A DNA stretch of 64,000 nt from Thecamonas trahens ATCC 50062 (taxonomy: Eukaryota > Protista > Apusomonadida), in the NCBI RefSeq assembly GCF_000142905.1, contig NW_013657633.1:191855-255854 (forward strand), given 5' to 3'. A program made the position numbers and the translations under genes. Below, in pieces: positions 14,306-21,499 of the stretch (positions are counted from its first letter, which is position 1; every line of letters begins with the position of its first letter). The notes under the pieces were generated by a model. It saw nothing but the letters and a program-made list of their open reading frames with translations. It was not told the DNA's origin and searched no databases.

Positions 14306-16284
14306 TCAGTCTCCAAACGCATTCAGTTCGGCTCCAGACAGGCTCTCAAACTCCTTGGCCTCGCGCGCAGCGCGCGCCTTCGCCAGCAACTTCCGCTTGA
14401 TCACCATGTAGGAGCCGATGCCCACACCGAGCACAACCACGGCAGCCACAATGACTCCGATGAGCACCCCCGTCGCCCCAGACGTGTCCTTTGGCGGCGC
14501 CTGCGCCGGAAACGTTACTCCGATCCGCCCTAGCTCAGAATCGCTGCCGTCCACAGCGGGCCTCGCCGGCTTCTTCCCTGTGAGAACGTCAACAAGCTCG
14601 CGGACAAGCGAGGGTCCTGTCCGGTTGCCGCAGTCGATGATGGTAAAGGTCACCGTGTCTGGCGGGTTTTCCGGCGGCTCGGCCTTGATCACGATGCACG
14701 ACTCGTCGATGTCGAGCTCGTACGCCACCGCTGCCAGAAACACGCTTCGGTTGTACGGCTTGGACAGCTCAAGGACGACCGTGAGCGACTCGGCGTCGGC
14801 ATCGTTGACATTGCACAGCGGCGAAAACTGCCACCCCACGTCGCAATCGCACCGGTCGTTGAGCGAGATCGGGCACACCCCGTGGCCCGAGCAGTCCGGC
14901 GGGTTGCACGCCACAGAAAACTGGTCACAGTTGCGTCCGTTCCACGACCCCACGTTGTCCACCACGCACTCGCACGTCCCATCGTTGCACACTCCGTGGT
15001 TCAGCTCCTCGCCGCATCCGCCCTCGCACCGCCGCTCCTCGCAGTACTGGCCTGTAAAGTTCGCCGTGCACTCGCACACGCCCTGGTTGCACACCCCGCG
15101 CTCCGGCCCATAGCAGTCAAAGGGACAGAGAATGATCGAGCAGTCAAAGCCGGCTCGGAGCGTGTTGCAGTTGCACGTCGTCCCGGTGCACACACCGCCG
15201 CTGCTCGCCGCGTTGCAGTTGTTCGGGCACGTTGCAGTCTCCACAACAATCACTTGTGCCGGGTTCGACTGCGTCCCAAAGTACACCCGCTCGTTGGCCA
15301 CGTCGATCACCGCAGACTGTAGCCGCTTCTCGCCCGTGTTGAGTGTAAGCGTCTCAACAAGTTCCATGCTCGTCGCGTTCACCAGGTACACAAACCCGAC
15401 AGGAATCGAGTTGGCGCCCCAGTACTGCAGCCCAGTCGTCGGATCCATCGCCGCAGACCGAATCCCAGCCGAGCCTGTAAAGAGCCGCCGGCCTGTTCGG
15501 AAAAAGGCGGCAGGATCCGTAACATCCACCTCTACAACAAAGTTGGCCGACGAATCCGTTCCAAAGTAAGCCTTGGTACGCGTCCCCTCGCCCCGCAACA
15601 GCGACGCAGACATAAAGTCCTCGCCTGACTCGAGCAACTTGGATGATATCGTTCCAGTCTTCAAGCTTGTGGCTGAGAATGGCGCCACCTTGGTGGGCTT
15701 GGTCAGCGAGGCGCCGAACATCATCTCCGTCACGGGGTCAAGAGCCATGGTGAAAAACCGATCTCCAAGATTCTCCCCAACCACTTGCACTAGTGGGCTG
15801 ATCGAATACTTGTAAACCATGATCTTCATCGCTGCGTCTTGGTCACACGAGACAATCGCCGTGCTCCTTGCAGGGTCCACAACAAGTGCAAAGTACGGTG
15901 GCCGCCCGGCCGGGGCGTGCGACTCTACAACCGCGTGTGTCGTCGGCGAGACGGTAGCCACCACCCCATCAAACGTCGCGACAATGATGAGCGTGCTGTT
16001 CGCGTCAAAGCCTGCACTCTTGACCTTGTTCAGCCCCGAGACAGAGCCCTCCCACACAACAGTGTTGGCAGCCGTGTCGATCTCCACAAGATACGTCGGG
16101 CTCTCAAATGAGAAAAAGTACGCTCGCGACGTGTCTGGGTCCGACGTCGCCGCCAGAAAGTCGGCGTGGCCGGCAAAGGTAAACGCTGACGACCGCGAGA
16201 ACGTGGTCGCAGCACCATGCCGTGCCATTAGAGTGACCACTAGCACCAAGAGAAGCTTCGCACACTGTCGCCGGGGAGGATCAT
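14306..16284 (-). CDS. Type I membrane protein: beta-propeller-like ectodomain + about 4 tenascin/integrin-type EGF repeats + TM + short tail; the start at 16284 needs +1 nt at the 16273-16276 run
   Basis: Repeated blades (SAAMDPTTGLQYWG, SAVIDVANERVYFG); EGF repeats (CYGPERGVCNQGVCECTANFTGQYC, CSGHGVC); TM GVLIGVIVAAVVVLGVGIGSYMVI; hydrophobic signal-like LLLVLVVTL just downstream of an out-of-frame ATG. Confidence 0.8.
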
Positions 16285-16655
16285 GGAGTGAGTGAGGAGA
16301 CGAAGTGCCGCCCGCCAAAGCAAAAAAGTATGCATGCCACTTCAGGCGGCCCTGTCCAGCCACCACGACGCCGGGTGGCTTTGGTGACCGGGAAGCAGCA
16401 CACTCTCGCATACCTTGTGCACTCCACAGACCGTCATGTGGATGTCCAAGTCTTAGGGGGTAGCCAAAAAATGGCGTCGAATACAAGCGCACAGGCTGAA
16501 GTCGTGGCTGTGAGCGTTGCTGGGGTGTGGGATCGCCATTTTGACAGACATTCGTCAGCCCCCACGCCATGCATCACCCTCCTCCACAGCGCTTGCGTCG
16601 GGACACGTTCGCGAAGTCATTCGACTCGCCCTTTGGCAGACAAAGGACGAAGAGC

Positions 16656-18490
16656 ATGCAACCTGTTGTTGTTGCTGTGCTGGCTTTGGTTGCTGTTGTG
16701 TGCGGGTGCATGTGTGTGGGTACGCAGCAGGTACCTCTTTGAACACAAGTATTTTTGTGGCACGACAAAAGCGTTGTCGAGGGTGGTGCACGCGAAAGGG
16801 CAAGGGGGATGGGGAGGGGGGAAGGGGGGGGGGGAACGAGGGGGGAGAGGAGGTGGGAACAGGGGCTGTGGAAGCAGTAGCAGAGTGGCTTGCCTGTTCA
16901 TCCAGCTGGCGACCACATGGGCGACCGGCCTGCTCACCTCGCGCCATCAACACTCACCACCGTGTGGCAACTCCTGCCGTGTACACACCTTCTGCTCGCA
17001 GACGCCGCCACGCCTGAAGAGCCGTTTTGCCTCTCATGGAACATGCCGAGTGTGTGCTTCTTCGAGACGGTCTATCCGTTACTGACTGATGAGACGTTCC
17101 AGGACTTTTACCAGTACAACATCCCGTTCGGTACGTGATCGTCCACCAAAGGGAGGGTGTGTGTGTGTGGGGTGTGTGGTGGAGAAGAGGTATGGCGCTC
17201 AAACTCACGATCATGCTTGTGGTCTGTCCCGCCCGCGCTGCTGGCGGCTGGCGGCTGGCTGCAGGCTCGAGCGCCAACTCGGGCATCGAGCTCTCGGGAG
17301 TCACCCAGTTCCTCATCGTCAAGGAGCAGGTCGGCAAGGCTGCGCCTGAAGACCAGCGCCTGGCACTCTCCGTCATCCACGACAAGCCACAAGACGGCGA
17401 TGGCGGCGCCATCGCCTTTAACTTTTCCGCTCCCGGCGCCGGCTTTCCATACTTTTTCGAGGCCAATACCGGCGACAACACGAATTCCAACGTGCCGCCC
17501 TTTCTTGTGCGCGACGATGTCACCCATCGCCTCGACGGCTACTTTTTCGACAACGAGACCGAGTCTGGCGAGTGCCACTGGGCCTACGCCGCGTGTTGCA
17601 CCGATGGAGCCTCGATCGGTCCGCTCATCTCGCCGCTCGAGTCGGTTCCGTACGAGATTACTATCAAGTTCACGGAGCTGATTGATGCCGTCAACGTCAC
17701 TGGTGCGAACGATGCCGCCAGTAGGGGTGATCCTTGGTCCCAGGAAGTCTACTTTCGCAACGCTCCACCGCTGCAGCCCACCCATCTCATTCGCCTTCCC
17801 ACCAGGAACGGGACCATCTACCCTGAGCTCCGGCTCCGCCCCGGCGCGTGCGCCCCGCGGCCGCCGTGCGACTACGGCTGCTTCGAGTGCCAGGCCCACC
17901 CCGAGTGTGGATGGTGTGGCGCGACCCAGACGTGCCACGACCGGACGTGCGACGACGCATTTGCCGCCTGCCCTACCGCCGAAGTCGACGCAACGTGCCC
18001 GACCGCCACCTACTGTGCCGCCCGGGACACTTGCGAGGCGTGCGCTGTTGAGACTGTCTGCACCTCTTGCTCGATCTTTGACAACTCGACGTTGAGTGTC
18101 AACACCACGTGCATCGCCAAGGACCTCCTCAACTATAACTTTACCACCTGCGAGTCGGTTAACGACACGCTCGCCTTCTGCCCGCAGGACCCGAGCGTGA
18201 CCAACTCGACCCGCGGGCCGACAAACGTGACCCAGCCGGACACCATCGACATCAGCGACCTCATTCCGGCTTCAGCACCTGGCGAGTCTATCCCGGTCTG
18301 GATCTTCATTGCCATCGGCGTCGCCGTCTTTGTTCTCTTTGCCGTCCTCGTCCTCGTCATCTGGAAGCTGTTGCGAGTCCAGCAGGAGGTCGCCTCTATC
18401 GTCGCCTTTGAGGACACAGACGACATCAAGAGCAACCCGCTGTTCGAGGACAACACCAAGGACAAGCTCAACCCGCTCTACGCCGACTGA
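16656..18490 (+). CDS. Type I membrane protein with PSI-like Cys modules and an integrin-beta-like cytoplasmic tail; exons 16656-16719, 16906-17130, 17265-18490
   Basis: Signal peptide MQPVVVAVLALVAVVCGCMCVA; two phase-consistent GTACG...CAG introns; PSI motif CDYGCFECQAHPECGWC; TM; tail WKLL...FE...NPLF-x8-NPLY. Confidence 0.8.
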
Positions 18491-18521
18491 AGTGCGGCAA
18501 TTAAAGTTTCTGTTTGCTTCG

Positions 18522-21098
18522 CTACGGCCCAACCCGCCGCCGCACCCGTGCGCCGGTGATCCGCAGGCCGTCGATCCCATTGTCGTCACCACCGTCGCCG
18601 CCGTCGCCGCCCGCGACTTTGTACCGCGGCAGCGACGACGTCGATCGCGCGCTCACCAGCCCGCGCCGCCGATCCGCCCGCCCTGCGCTCTGCGGCATCC
18701 GCATCACCAGTCCCGCTCGGCGCGGGCCAGCGCTTGCACTACGCCCGCTTGAGCCGCCCAGCGGCCCGTACCTGACCTCGCGCTTCGGCGCGTGCCCGAG
18801 TTTGGACGCCACCGCGCCCCATGTCAGTGGCACGCTTGCCATCCGCTCCAACTCCTCCGGCTCGACCACGATTACGTTGTGCACTTTGCGCCCGTCTGCA
18901 GCCACGGGCTCGGGTTGCGGTTGCGGTTGTGGTTGTGGTTGGGCTTCAGGCTCGGCTTCGGGCTCGGCTTTGGGCTCGATTTCGGCCTCGCCATCGGCCT
19001 CGACCTCAACACCATCGACCTCGACCTCAACCCCATCGGCCTCGACCTCAACCCCATCGACCTCGACCTCAACCCCATCGGCCTCGACCTCAACCCCATC
19101 GGCCTCGACCTCAACACCATCGACCTCGACCTCAACACCATCGGCCTCGACCTCAATCCCATCGGCCTCGACCTCAACCCCATCGACCTCGACCTCAACA
19201 CCATCGACCTCATCAGCTTCAACCACTTCCACTGCTGCTCCAGCGGCCCCAGCAGCCCCAGTCCCAGATCCAGCTCCAGGCTTGGCCCCAATCCCAATAA
19301 ATTCATCCACGCTACCCGCCCCAGACTTGATCAGCGCCCACACGAGATGGTTCGTCCGGAACGACGATAGAAAGTAACCGACATACCGCTCAAAGGTCGA
19401 CGGCCGCGGAAAAAGAAGCCGAAACCGCCCGCGCCGTGAGATCTGGAGCTCAAACTCGCGGAGGACCCGAACGTCGGCGGCGCTCAGCGCGCCAAGCCCC
19501 CACTCGTCCCGCTCCGCACTCCGCCGCTCCCGCCGGCGCCCCTTGCCCCGCGCCGCCTTGCCTCGCCCCACCGCCATGCCTGCAGACGTCGGCCGCACAA
19601 GCCGCGAGGCCACGCTCCGCCGCTCCGCACGCCCGTGCTGACCGACGTCGTACGCCGTAAAGCCCGCAAGATTGAACAAATCGCACACCATCGCGTCCTT
19701 GATCCGCCGGTCCAGCGCCGTTGACGTGTGGAGTGACGGCGAGATGTTGACTTCGATGAGCCACGGCTTGAGCTTGGAGTCCAGAAAGACGTCAAAACCA
19801 AAGAGTTCGTAGCATGTCGACCGATGCCGCGTCTCGGCCCGTACCACTCCTGCGACCTCGGACTCCATCGCAATGATGGTCTTGACTACAAGATCGTCCA
19901 CACGCTCCCACACCTCATCCCCGCCGATCCCGTGCTCCGCAAAGTACTGCTTGAGCGCGGCCAGCGACCATTTGTGGGCCTGGCTCTCGTCGCTCCCGCC
20001 GTCCGACTCGCTGCCAGACTCGCTTCCGGCCTCCGCGCCCGCTGCCTTGTACTCGGTGTTGTGCTTGTTGACAGAGTAGTTGGTTAGGTGCATGAACCGG
20101 TTCGACCACGAGTCCGCCCCTGGCGCGTACTTGACCGTCGCAAACCGCACAAGCCCGTCGTCAAAGAGGTACACAGTCAGCGGATTGACAGACATGACCG
20201 CCACATACAGCCGGATGTCAAACTTGGTCCCGTTGATCAGCAGCGGGCTCTTGATGTACCGCTGCACAATGCAAGACTTGCCGGACGGCACCTCGGACGC
20301 CCGCGAAATAACCTGGATCCCATTTCCACGCGCCGATGCTCGCGGCTTGACAATCCACGGCGTCCCACCCTTGAGCGTCCGCATCTTGCGCCGCAGGGAC
20401 GCCTCGCCCTGCGGCAACAGGTAGGTCAGCGGAAAGAACGCATAATCGCCGCCAGGATGCGCAGACGCCATCCGCCGCAGCGTGAGGTACAGGCGGTCCT
20501 TCCGTCCGATCGCAGACGAGCCCGGCAAGTGGTTGATCCGCGTAAACTGCGAGACTTTGCGGTGGATGCCGTCCTTCCGCCGTGGGCCCCACGTTCCCAG
20601 CCACGCCCGCGACGTCCGCTTCACAACCTGCACCCCTGCCCTCATCATTGCACGCTTCACCACGTGTGGCGTTTTGCGCGTCGCCAGAAAAACCATCGAC
20701 CGCCGCAGCCGCTTCGGCATCCCGGCACGCTCCGCTGCACCCACCGCCGCCGCGTCGTCCTCGCCGCCGCTCGCGCCCTCGCCCTCATGCTCAAACGTGA
20801 GCAGCGCCACAGGCAGGCCGGGCATGTTCACTGCAGGTAGCGCCGTCGTCAGCATCGCCTCCCTGGGCGCAGGCGTCTCCTCCAACGAGTGCAGCACCCG
20901 GCGGCCGCCCTGTTGGCCCACAGTGCCCGTCGCCGCATGCTTGGCCTGCGCCTCCTCTGACTCGCCGCAACTCCTCCGCCCACTCCCTGTTCCGGCACCA
21001 CCGTCGCACCCCGAGTGCGAGGACTCTGTGCCCGACTCGCTCTCCGAGCCCAGGCCCCACCTCGGTTCCGTGTCGTCCACCTCTGACTGCGCTGCCAT
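18522..21098 (-). CDS. TTLL4: Tubulin polyglutamylase (TTLL4/TTLL5-like)
   Basis: INHLPGSSAIGRKDRL, WIVKPRASARGNGI, VQRYIKSPLLINGTKFDIRLYV, MHLTNYSVNK, CYELFGFDVFLDSKLKPWLIEVNISPSL. Start codon uncertain. Confidence 0.9.
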   Translation of the reverse strand: MAAQSEVDDTEPRWGLGSESESGTESSHSGCDGGAGTGSGRRSCGESEEAQAKHAATGTVGQQGGRRVLHSLEETPAPREAMLTTALPAVNMPGLPVALLTFEHEGEGASGGEDDAAAVGAAERAGMPKRLRRSMVFLATRKTPHVVKRAMMRAGVQVVKRTSRAWLGTWGPRRKDGIHRKVSQFTRINHLPGSSAIGRKDRLYLTLRRMASAHPGGDYAFFPLTYLLPQGEASLRRKMRTLKGGTPWIVKPRASARGNGIQVISRASEVPSGKSCIVQRYIKSPLLINGTKFDIRLYVAVMSVNPLTVYLFDDGLVRFATVKYAPGADSWSNRFMHLTNYSVNKHNTEYKAAGAEAGSESGSESDGGSDESQAHKWSLAALKQYFAEHGIGGDEVWERVDDLVVKTIIAMESEVAGVVRAETRHRSTCYELFGFDVFLDSKLKPWLIEVNISPSLHTSTALDRRIKDAMVCDLFNLAGFTAYDVGQHGRAERRSVASRLVRPTSAGMAVGRGKAARGKGRRRERRSAERDEWGLGALSAADVRVLREFELQISRRGRFRLLFPRPSTFERYVGYFLSSFRTNHLVWALIKSGAGSVDEFIGIGAKPGAGSGTGAAGAAGAAVEVVEADEVDGVEVEVDGVEVEADGIEVEADGVEVEVDGVEVEADGVEVEADGVEVEVDGVEVEADGVEVEVDGVEVEADGEAEIEPKAEPEAEPEAQPQPQPQPQPEPVAADGRKVHNVIVVEPEELERMASVPLTWGAVASKLGHAPKREVRYGPLGGSSGRSASAGPRRAGLVMRMPQSAGRADRRRGLVSARSTSSLPRYKVAGGDGGDGGDDNGIDGLRITGARVRRRVGP
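18991..19210. repeat. 21-bp coding minisatellite (about 10 units) encoding DGVEVE[A/V] in the TTLL gene
   Basis: Unit ccatcg(g/a)cctcgacctcaac(a/c) repeated in tandem. Confidence 0.95.
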
Positions 21099-21499
21099 CC
21101 CCAGCCTCACCGAGTGATGTGTCTTCAACTCCGCGCCCGGCTGCCACCCGACGCCCGACTCTGCGACCGGTCTGAGACCCTTCCAGACGTACCAGGCCAA
21201 TCAATGCAACGATGCGTACCCACACACTCTGTCCAGGCTACGATGGCTTGCCATGCGCCATTCCTGGCCACGCGGCGCCAAGAGCGTCCCATTTGCCAGT
21301 GCCCGATGGCATGGATCCGGTCATGGACGACGGTTTTCCCTCTCGCCTCCTTTCCTCTCGCCACGATCAATACACGACAATGCAGTTACAGATAGTCCAT
21401 GTTGTTACTTTGAGATCACGCATCTTTGTGTATCCACAGCATCCGCAACGCGTGCGCCAGAGGCAGAGTTGTGCGCCTGAGAGTTGTTTCGAAATCTGG

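What the first reader, a model, noticed from the sequence alone, without database searches (positions are those of the whole stretch)
14306..18490. Head-to-head receptor pair that divides integrin-beta modules between two genes
Seen: two type I membrane genes transcribed divergently from an intergenic region of about 370 bp. The plus gene has PSI-like Cys modules and the tail WKLLRVQQEVASIVAFE...NPLF-x8-NPLY. The minus gene has a propeller-like head, integrin/tenascin-type EGF repeats, a GxxxG-containing TM and the tail KLL-x6-RE-x3-FE. Established: the integrin beta1 tail is WKLLMIIHDRREFAKFE...NPIY-x8-NPKY, so both spacings match, and a canonical beta chain is PSI + vWA + EGFs + tail. Neither gene shows a vWA/MIDAS domain. 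Inference: a co-regulated heterodimer or paralogous pair forming a non-canonical, talin/kindlin-engaging adhesion receptor, analogous to Dictyostelium Sib proteins but with a different architecture.
Basis: partly seen in the sequence, partly recalled or inferred. Interest (0 to 1): 0.8.

Follow-up and report, generated by a model that had tools for sequence, protein, structure and literature searches.

The report
Integrin-tail receptor beside unrelated receptor
In the protist Thecamonas trahens, one of two back-to-back surface-receptor genes carries a tail very like the talin-docking tail of integrin beta on an unrelated outer part, and at least five other receptor loci in the genome share that tail; nothing beyond adjacency shows that the two neighbours work as a pair.

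Summary
The window is Thecamonas trahens. The genes are AMSG_09282 (minus) and AMSG_09283 (plus), both annotated only as uncharacterised.

**Observation:** both tails read exactly as quoted, and neither gene has a vWA domain.

**Plus gene:**
- Its tail has NPLF-x8-NPLY, conserved in a roughly 50%-identical ortholog.
- A tail profile finds the organism's single canonical integrin beta.
- It also finds five more non-integrin loci with the same [NS]PxY-x8-[NS]Px[YFA] tail. Three of these sit on other ectodomains (vWA+EGF, PA14+Ig, a novel Cys-rich type).
- The likeness to integrin beta is confined to the double-motif segment. Pfam Integrin_b_cyt scores 13.7 bits against a cut-off of 23.4.
- A predicted complex of the tail with the organism's talin F2F3 gave weak support (0.51; best control 0.02).
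- The public 5' model looks wrong. A three-exon model matching a transcript-derived ortholog puts the start at 16656, 218 bp from the minus gene's start.

**Minus gene:** a ~45-aa repeat head (probably a propeller), four teneurin-type EGFs, a GxxxG membrane helix and a short tail without NPxY. Its KLL..RE..FE match is no better than shuffles.

**Pairing:** no evidence beyond adjacency, and divergent pairs are common in this genome.

Other first-stage notes cover this same stretch (16656-18490), not other DNA.

The parts
14306..16255 (-). Minus gene AMSG_09282, exon 2 (to the stop codon). It encodes the rest of the signal peptide, the repeat head, EGFs, juxtamembrane domain, membrane helix and tail.
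   Evidence: 100% identical to NCBI protein P0005 (657 aa). Splice acceptor read.
16414..16437 (-). Minus gene exon 1 (8 codons, MTVCGVHK). The intron 16256-16413 runs GTATGC...AG.
15233..16171 (-). Minus gene head: about 7 repeats of ~45 aa (SAVID..YFGT..P..VV type), probably a beta-propeller.
   Evidence: Repeat consensus shared with bacterial homologs. A repeat HMM built from those homologs finds 4 units in the head. Atlas look-alikes are propeller families at 0.87-0.89, a lead only. No Pfam, PDB or NCBIfam sequence match.
14813..15229 (-). Four 6-Cys teneurin/tenascin-type EGF repeats.
   Evidence: PF25024 at E 1.4e-13 and PF23106 at 26.6 bits, above its cut-off. Cys spacing.
14549..14803 (-). 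Juxtamembrane alpha/beta domain, possibly SEA-like. This is an inference from the secondary structure of a low-confidence model only.
   Evidence: beta-alpha-beta-beta-alpha order, pLDDT below 50. Conserved in ortholog P0006.
14402..14482 (-). Minus gene membrane helix with GVLIG and GVGIG motifs.
14309..14401 (-). Minus gene 31-aa cytoplasmic tail, KRKLL-x6-RE-x3-FE, with no NPxY.
   Evidence: ortholog keeps KRKLLA.ARA.R...EF. Not significantly like the tail family and not matched by Integrin_b_cyt.
16438..16655 (.). 218 bp between the two start codons: the divergent promoter and 5'UTR region.
16656..16719 (+). Plus gene AMSG_09283, proposed exon 1, encoding the signal peptide. Donor site G|GTACGC.
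   Evidence: 9 of 10 identical to the signal peptide of transcript-derived ortholog P0030. Phase and splice sites. Another first-stage note also starts the gene at 16656.
17002..17130 (+). Plus gene exon 2, the start of the N-terminal domain. Acceptor CAG, donor G|GTACGT.
   Evidence: 76% identity over 37 aa to P0030 residues 27-63. Part of it is in NCBI model P0026.
17131..17264 (+). Plus gene intron 2. It contains the in-frame 'MALKL...' stretch that looks like a signal peptide and that ORF callers and the NCBI model read as coding.
   Evidence: Homologs run straight from ...PFG to SANxG with nothing in between. GT..AG and phase check.
17265..18490 (+). Plus gene exon 3 (to the stop codon): the rest of the N-domain, Cys-rich stalk, membrane helix and tail.
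17267..17839 (+). N-terminal beta-sandwich domain of an uncharacterised family (motifs IHDKPxDGxGG, DDP, WxWxxCCTDG).
   Evidence: Distant homologs, some with MopE metal-binding motifs and a bacterial lipobox. The AF2 domain has pLDDT about 60-70. VIA Z about 8 to adhesin and cohesin-type sandwiches, which indicates only the general fold. No Pfam or NCBIfam match.
17840..18187 (+). Cys-rich stalk with 18 Cys. The first module has a PSI-like CGWC motif.
   Evidence: Cys map. (PSI is the only Pfam hit, E 0.46, below threshold). (shares ECGWC with the membrane-proximal module of the canonical integrin beta).
18290..18361 (+). Plus gene membrane helix, ending ...VIW before KLL.
18362..18487 (+). 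42-aa integrin-beta-like tail: WKLL, E at +8, FE, NPLF (18434-18445), 8 residues, NPLY (18470-18481).

Best explanation
These are two independent, adjacent surface-receptor genes of Thecamonas trahens that share a short divergent promoter region.

**Plus gene (AMSG_09283).** It encodes a type I receptor. An uncharacterised beta-sandwich domain and a Cys-rich, PSI-like stalk face outward. The 42-residue tail is a copy of a tail 'cassette' also carried by the organism's one canonical integrin beta and by at least five other non-integrin loci. The cassette consists of a basic membrane border, an acidic helix, a hydrophobic residue 3 before the first motif, then [NS]PxY/F, 8 residues, and [NS]PxY/F.

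**Inferred mechanism.** The first motif docks into the PTB-like F3 lobe of talin, linking the bound particle or surface to actin, as SibA does in Dictyostelium. The second motif recruits another PTB-type adaptor.

**Minus gene (AMSG_09282).** It is a different receptor: a repeat head (probably a propeller), four teneurin-type EGFs, a juxtamembrane domain, a GxxxG membrane helix and a short basic helical tail that lacks the talin motif.

**Shown versus inferred.** Shown: gene structures, domain content, the tail family, its restriction to the motif segment, and the presence of talin. Inferred: talin binding, the adhesion or phagocytosis role, and independence of the two genes.
For: - **Identity:** (AMSG_09282 and AMSG_09283).
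- **Tail conservation:** the tail is conserved in orthologs of about 50% identity.
- **Tail family, first search:** a profile of membrane helix plus tail searched over the whole genome returns, in order, a vWA+EGF receptor on C9 and the canonical integrin beta on C30 (E 1.7e-4). It then returns C35 (PA14+Big_9), C11 and C4.
- **Tail family, second search:** a second round adds C35:286k.
- **Spacing:** the five other non-integrin loci and the canonical integrin beta, apart from the C9 tail, whose second motif has degenerated (NAIH), keep the 8-residue spacing.
- **Significance:** the non-integrin tail profile scores the canonical beta tail at 22.3 bits, and 0 of 2000 shuffles reach that.
- **PDB search:** the only three hits of the tail profile at E up to 10 are integrin beta2, beta3 and beta7 tails.
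- **Talin and integrin beta:** talin with a complete FERM head is present. There is one canonical integrin beta, as published (PMC4325847).
- **Complex prediction:** 0.51 in each of 3 runs against a best control of 0.02, with at least 83% contact agreement and partner pLDDT at least 52. The tool's verdict is 'weak support'.
- **Precedent:** SibA with two NPxY motifs couples to talin; the Entamoeba lectin and Acanthamoeba MBP are proposed equivalents (PMC12686525).
- **Independence of the two genes:** the ectodomains are unrelated, the minus gene is a singleton, and its tail has no relatives in the genome. The tail relative on C9 has no head-to-head receptor neighbour.
Against: - Pfam Integrin_b_cyt is below its cut-off (13.7 against 23.4 bits) and aligns only positions 27-44.
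- The membrane-proximal half is not significantly like the canonical tail (162 of 2000 shuffles; 689 of 5000). The tail could therefore be a convergent short motif rather than a homolog.
- The Trp that lies 5 residues before NPxY in the canonical tail is absent.
- The complex score is in the band the tool calls 'more often wrong than right unless likely beforehand', and it may reflect memory of solved integrin-talin complexes.
- No expression, localisation or binding data exist.
- A start-to-start distance of 218 bp is compatible with co-regulation, so functional coupling of the two genes is not excluded.
Confidence: 0.6

Rival explanations
1. The two genes encode the two chains of an integrin-like heterodimer built from unrelated parts. 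The propeller-headed, GxxxG, short-tailed minus protein would act like an alpha chain. The plus protein would act like a beta chain that carries the talin-docking tail. Both would be expressed from one bidirectional promoter.
For: - The genes lie head to head with 218 bp between start codons.
- The minus protein has a roughly 7-repeat head, a GxxxG helix and a short basic tail without NPxY.
- The plus tail has an acidic residue 8 positions after the border Lys, as integrin beta does, and this is conserved in its relatives.
- Both genes have orthologs in a related marine species.
Against: - There is no evidence of contact.
- Divergent neighbours are common in this compact genome.
- Other members of the tail family were not seen with such a partner.
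- There is no FG-GAP or integrin-alpha match and no GFFKR motif.
- Linkage in other species could not be tested.
Confidence: 0.12
2. The NPxF/NPxY motifs are endocytic sorting signals of the LDL-receptor type, not talin anchors. On this reading the plus protein and its tail relatives are uptake or recycling receptors, sorted by PTB adaptors or AP-2.
For: - NPxY is also a classical internalisation signal (established knowledge).
- The Trp upstream of the first motif is missing from the plus tail.
- The organism is a phagotroph.
- The ectodomains in the tail family are diverse and adhesin-like.
Against: - The 8-residue spacing of the two motifs is kept across the canonical integrin beta, the plus gene and four of its five tail relatives (the C9 tail has lost its second motif). 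This is an integrin-beta hallmark, not an LDLR one.
- The talin F2F3 prediction passed, though weakly.
- The two roles are not exclusive.
Confidence: 0.2
3. The resemblances are chance or low-complexity features of short tails and carry no common function.
For: The membrane-proximal similarities (KLL, RE, FE) are not significant for either gene. Pfam matches are below threshold.
Against: - The double motif with fixed spacing is conserved in orthologs and recurs in five of the six other tails found in the genome, the sixth (C9) keeping only the first motif.
- 0 of 2000 shuffles reach the observed score.
- The pattern was expected 0.00 times in the window.
Confidence: 0.05

Closest known systems
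Dictyostelium Sib proteins (SibA-E), 'similar to integrin beta'
   Same: Both are single-pass non-integrin receptors with two NPxY motifs in a short tail, and SibA couples to talin (PMC12686525). The concept is the same as for the plus gene. The C9 relative of the tail family also has a vWA domain with a DxSxS motif.
   Different: The plus gene has no vWA domain and none of the bacterial-type repeats of Sib. Its head is an uncharacterised beta-sandwich followed by a PSI-like stalk. Unlike Dictyostelium, Thecamonas also keeps a canonical integrin beta and talin. Sib proteins were reported not to occur outside Dictyostelia (bioRxiv 10.1101/2020.04.29.069435).
Canonical integrin beta subunit (here the single T. 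trahens gene on contig C30)
   Same: Both are type I proteins with a Cys-rich stalk containing a CGWC module near the membrane, a Trp/Lys membrane border, an acidic residue at +8, and NPxY-x8-NPxY.
   Different: The plus gene has no beta-I/vWA head, no 8-Cys I-EGF repeats and no Trp at -5, and Integrin_b_cyt scores below its cut-off.
Entamoeba Gal/GalNAc lectin heavy subunit and Acanthamoeba mannose-binding protein
   Same: Both are protist adhesion receptors with integrin-beta-like or NPxY-bearing tails, proposed to engage talin without integrins (PMC12686525).
   Different: The ectodomains are unrelated. I did not compare the sequences here.
Teneurin/tenascin-type EGF receptors (for the minus gene)
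   Same: Both have tandem 6-Cys EGFs matching PF23106 and PF25024.
   Different: The minus gene has no other teneurin domain. Its head is a repeat family shared with bacterial proteins, and the protein is only 657 aa.

Membership tests
Canonical integrin beta | Beta-I (vWA-like) head domain with MIDAS (Pfam PF00362) | tested here: not met
   Neither protein has a hit. The genome-wide search finds PF00362 only on C30.
Canonical integrin beta | PSI domain (PF01437) | tested here: inconclusive
   Plus gene, first Cys module: 11.3 bits, E 0.46, cut-off 23.1. It is the only Pfam hit for that piece. The minus gene has none.
Canonical integrin beta | 8-Cys I-EGF stalk repeats | tested here: not met
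   The plus gene has no EGF hit. The minus gene has four 6-Cys teneurin-type EGFs.
Canonical integrin beta | Integrin_b_cyt (PF08725) at or above 23.4 bits | tested here: not met
   Plus tail: 13.7 bits, profile positions 27-44 only. Minus tail: no hit at E up to 10. The canonical C30 tail scores 24.4-29.4 bits.
Canonical integrin beta | Two NPxY/F motifs 8 residues apart in the tail | tested here: met
   Plus gene: NPLF-x8-NPLY. Not met by the minus gene.
Sib-like receptors (non-integrin, integrin-beta-like tail) | Single-pass receptor with NPxY motifs in a short cytoplasmic tail | tested here: met
   Plus gene.
Sib-like receptors (non-integrin, integrin-beta-like tail) | Extracellular vWA domain | tested here: not met
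   Absent from both genes of the pair. Present in the tail relative on C9.
Sib-like receptors (non-integrin, integrin-beta-like tail) | The tail binds talin | tested here: inconclusive
   Complex prediction with the organism's own talin F2F3: 0.51 against a best control of 0.02, 'weak support'. No binding experiment exists.
Integrin alpha (considered for the minus gene) | FG-GAP seven-blade propeller, Ig-like thigh and calf domains, GFFKR tail motif | tested here: not met
   No FG-GAP or Integrin_alpha Pfam hit. The tail is KRKLLAK.... The head repeats belong to another family, shared with bacteria.
Teneurin/tenascin-type EGF | Match to PF23106 above its cut-off | tested here: met
   Minus gene: 26.6 bits against 24.3. 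PF25024 at E 1.4e-13.

The most novel reading that the evidence does not exclude
The head-to-head genes encode a two-chain adhesion receptor that re-creates integrin logic from unrelated parts. The minus gene would be a propeller-headed, GxxxG, short-tailed 'alpha-like' chain. The plus gene would be a 'beta-like' chain with the talin-docking double-NPxY tail. Both would be driven by one 218-bp bidirectional promoter and would coexist with a canonical integrin in the same cell.
Probability: 0.1. Interest if true: 0.85.

Novelty: new variant of a known kind. Interest (0 to 1): 0.5.

Why it matters
Talin-coupled adhesion through non-integrin receptors is established only for Dictyostelium SibA. 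It has been proposed for a few amoebozoan lectins (PMC12686525), and Sib-type proteins were reported absent outside Dictyostelia (bioRxiv 10.1101/2020.04.29.069435).

An apusomonad has one canonical integrin beta and also places the same double-motif tail on at least six other loci. Four of these carry different ectodomains (a novel sandwich, vWA+EGF, PA14+Ig, a novel Cys-rich type). This suggests that the integrin-beta tail is a portable talin/PTB docking cassette that was already widely used near the root of Obazoa.

That makes the origin of the integrin-talin link testable with simple peptide-binding experiments. It also gives candidate adhesion or prey-capture receptors for a gliding phagotroph. 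Finally, it flags a probable 5' mis-annotation of AMSG_09283, which hides its signal peptide.

Tried and rejected
- **Minus protein structure.** Single-sequence AF2 failed (pLDDT 37.7), so the propeller is not shown structurally. That was a wasted job; I should have given it an alignment.
- **Plus protein structure.** AF2 on the database model P0026 with a 14-row alignment was poor overall (pLDDT 48.7). Only the N-domain was usable, and VIA matches at Z about 8 indicate no more than a general adhesin-type beta-sandwich. Atlas fold hits had TM of 0.35 or less by the query.
- **Family and structure searches.** Pfam, NCBIfam and PDB-sequence searches gave no family for either head domain.
- **Relatives.** The exhaustive HMMER search found only 9 relatives of the plus protein. 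A profile word search added 2.
- **Synteny.** Both metagenome scans found nothing. The ENA contig with 99% identity is the same organism, and the ortholog contig is only 1155 bp.
- **Kindlin and integrin alpha.** Kindlin_2_N and Integrin_A_Ig_1 gave no match in the genome, but their controls found nothing either, so this shows little.
- **Rejected: the minus tail is integrin-beta-like.**
- **Rejected: the 'MALKL' start of the plus gene.** It lies in an intron.
- **Spliced protein.** Exons were searched separately by reference, and the database model P0026 was used for folding.
Full report
**Identity and gene models**

The window is contig C47 of a 28.7-Mb Thecamonas trahens assembly.
- The minus gene is 100% identical to NCBI AMSG_09282, a 657-aa 'uncharacterized / EGF-like domain-containing' protein.
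- The plus gene falls in the 90% cluster of AMSG_09283, 462 aa and 'uncharacterized'.
- Neither accession occurs in the searchable literature.

The minus gene has a 24-nt first exon starting at 16437, a GTATGC..AG intron (16256-16413) and a second exon running to 14306.

The public model of the plus gene looks wrong at its 5' end.
- The transcript-derived ortholog P0030 and bacterial-type homologs run uninterrupted from '...YQYxxPFG' to 'SANxGxE'.
- In the window these two pieces are separated by 134 nt with GTACGT..CAG ends.
- That 134-nt stretch contains the in-frame 'MALKL...' sequence, which ORF callers take for a signal peptide.
- Upstream, a 64-nt exon starting at 16656 encodes a real signal peptide that is 9/10 identical to P0030's. 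It joins through a GTACGC..CAG intron in the correct phase.
- Exon 2 is 76% identical to P0030 residues 27-63, and exon 3 continues from residue 65.
- Another first-stage note independently started this gene at 16656, and another remarked on uniform GTACG donors.

Exons were searched by reference, and the database protein P0026 was used for folding.

**The plus protein**

*Outer part*
- The N-terminal part, about 230 residues spanning exon 2 and the first 190 residues of exon 3, has no Pfam or NCBIfam family.
- The exhaustive HMMER search found only nine relatives.
- Two relatives are close orthologs from marine samples. The rest are short proteins sharing the motifs IHDKPxDGxGG, DDP and WxWxxCCTDG.
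- Two of these (P0029, P0033) carry MopE metal-binding repeats, and one of them (P0033) a bacterial lipobox.
- AF2 gave a beta-sandwich of modest confidence. VIA-align 2 matched it at Z about 8 to Als, Cna-type collagen adhesins, pilins and cohesins. That score range indicates only a common fold.
- Next comes an 18-Cys stalk. Its first module has C-x3-C-x2-C-x5-C-x-W-C, for which PSI is the only Pfam hit, and a sub-threshold one.
- The pentapeptide ECGWC also occurs in the membrane-proximal module of the canonical integrin beta.
- Ten N-glycosylation sequons fit an extracellular location.

*Tail*
Its motifs and their spacing are kept in the roughly 50%-identical ortholog.

**The tail is a family, not a peculiarity of this locus**

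A paralog search with the plus protein matched only its membrane helix and tail, to a gene on contig C9. That gene is a 663-aa receptor with a signal peptide, a vWA domain with DTSGS, Dicty_CTDC-type Cys repeats and EGFs. It is, in effect, a Sib-like protein.

A profile of helix plus tail searched over the whole genome then found more members.

| Locus | Ectodomain |
|---|---|
| C30 | canonical integrin beta (E 1.7e-4) |
| C35:205k | PA14 + bacterial Ig |
| C4 and C11 | two paralogs with a novel Cys-rich ectodomain |
| C35:286k | not characterised (102-aa open frame) |

- The aligned tails other than C9's, whose second motif has degenerated (NAIH), share [NS]PxY/F, 8 residues, [NS]Px[YFA], and all have an aliphatic residue 3 before the first motif.
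- The genome has one canonical integrin beta, as published (PMC4325847).

**How integrin-like is the tail?**
- A profile of the six non-integrin tails (five T. trahens loci plus the plus gene's ortholog, membrane helix removed) scores the canonical tail at 22.3 bits. None of 2000 shuffles exceeds 12.
- Against all PDB sequences its only hits at E up to 10 are integrin beta2, beta3 and beta7 tails, at E 0.35-1.3.
- The signal lies in the double-motif segment. Pfam Integrin_b_cyt aligns only positions 27-44, at 13.7 bits against a cut-off of 23.4.
- The membrane-proximal halves are not significantly similar.
- Common descent of the tails is therefore plausible but unproven. Convergence on a shared adaptor-binding geometry is the alternative.

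**Talin**
- The genome encodes talin with a full FERM head.
- Talin F2F3 plus the 42-residue plus tail scored 0.51 in all three runs, against 0.02, 0.00 and 0.00 for the controls. Contact agreement was at least 83% and partner pLDDT at least 52.
- The tool's verdict is weak support. Passes at 0.60 or under were reached by only 5 of its 78 solved complexes and by all 4 mismatches that passed, and a pass may reflect memory of solved integrin-talin complexes.
- From my own knowledge, unchecked here: PIP kinase gamma binds talin F3 through W-x-x-SPLH. A hydrophobic residue at -3 with an [NS]PL[YFH] core is therefore a known talin-F3 ligand format.
- No kindlin N-domain was found, but that search's controls also found nothing. 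Kindlins are reported to arise in early metazoans (PMC4325847), so the partner of the second motif is open.

**The minus protein**
- *Head:* it aligns with long bacterial proteins made of 12 or more repeats of 46-56 aa, with consensus SAVID..AYFGT.T.PG.VVKV.
- *Repeat count:* an HMM of those repeats finds four units in the head, and the spacing allows about seven.
- *Fold:* language-model look-alikes are six- or seven-blade propeller families, but under 0.9, so they are leads only.
- *Stalk:* the head is followed by four 6-Cys teneurin-type EGFs and a roughly 85-residue juxtamembrane domain, possibly SEA-like by secondary-structure order only.
- *Membrane helix and tail:* next come a GxxxG helix and a 31-residue tail.
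- *Tail conservation:* the tail is conserved with its 59%-identical ortholog as KRKLLA.ARA.R...EF. It has no NPxY and no Integrin_b_cyt hit.
- *Tail significance:* it scores within the shuffle range against the tail family.
- *Paralogs:* the protein has no paralog in the genome, and neither does its tail.

**The pairing**

Nothing beyond adjacency links the two genes.
- The genome is compact. The plus gene's stop and the stop of the convergent TTLL gene are 31 bp apart.
- The window holds several other divergent junctions, with unrelated neighbours: TTLL, an ankyrin-repeat giant, WD40, a longin SNARE and DENN.
- The C9 tail relative has no head-to-head receptor partner.
- Linkage in other species could not be tested.
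- An alpha-like/beta-like reading of the pair remains an untested possibility, to which I give about 0.1.

**Verdict**

The integrin-like character belongs to the plus gene only, and it is one instance of a genome-wide family of receptors that reuse the integrin-beta tail. This places a Sib-like principle in an apusomonad that also has a true integrin. It is a new variant of a known kind and of moderate interest.

Noticed in passing
window 16656-17264: The public model of AMSG_09283 (P0026) probably retains part of an intron and lacks the signal-peptide exon. A three-exon model with GTACGC and GTACGT donors is collinear with the ortholog P0030.
   Followed up: yes
L010:2939-4930 (G000 contig C9): A 663-aa Sib-like receptor: signal peptide, vWA domain with DTSGS, Dicty_CTDC-type Cys repeats, EGFs, membrane helix and a tail related to the plus gene's. 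Sib proteins were reported absent outside Dictyostelia.
   Followed up: partly
L015:280-1719; L018:1486-2982 (-); L016:1480-3192 (-); L027 (minus strand, 102-aa frame): Further receptors with the same [NS]PxY-x8-[NS]Px[YFA] tail. One has PA14 plus a bacterial Ig domain, two are paralogs with an unrecognised Cys-rich ectodomain, and one is a short frame that may be a last exon or a remnant.
   Followed up: partly
window 16790-16860: A G-rich tract with runs of up to about 12 G, lying inside the proposed first intron of the plus gene and close to the divergent promoter region.
   Followed up: no
window 18490-18522: The stop codons of the plus gene and of the convergent tubulin-tyrosine-ligase-like gene (18522-21200, minus strand) are only 31 bp apart, so the two 3' UTRs must overlap or be very short.
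   Followed up: no
window 15233-16171 and proteins P0007-P0011: The repeat of the minus gene's head (about 46-56 aa, SAVID..AYFGT.T.PG.VVKV) forms long arrays in bacterial proteins and has no Pfam, NCBIfam or PDB sequence match. It is an undescribed repeat family.
   Followed up: partly
L009 (G000 contig C43) upstream of talin; L016: Runs of N (masked or gap sequence) lie just upstream of the talin coding region and inside the C11 receptor locus, so those gene models are incomplete in this assembly.
   Followed up: no
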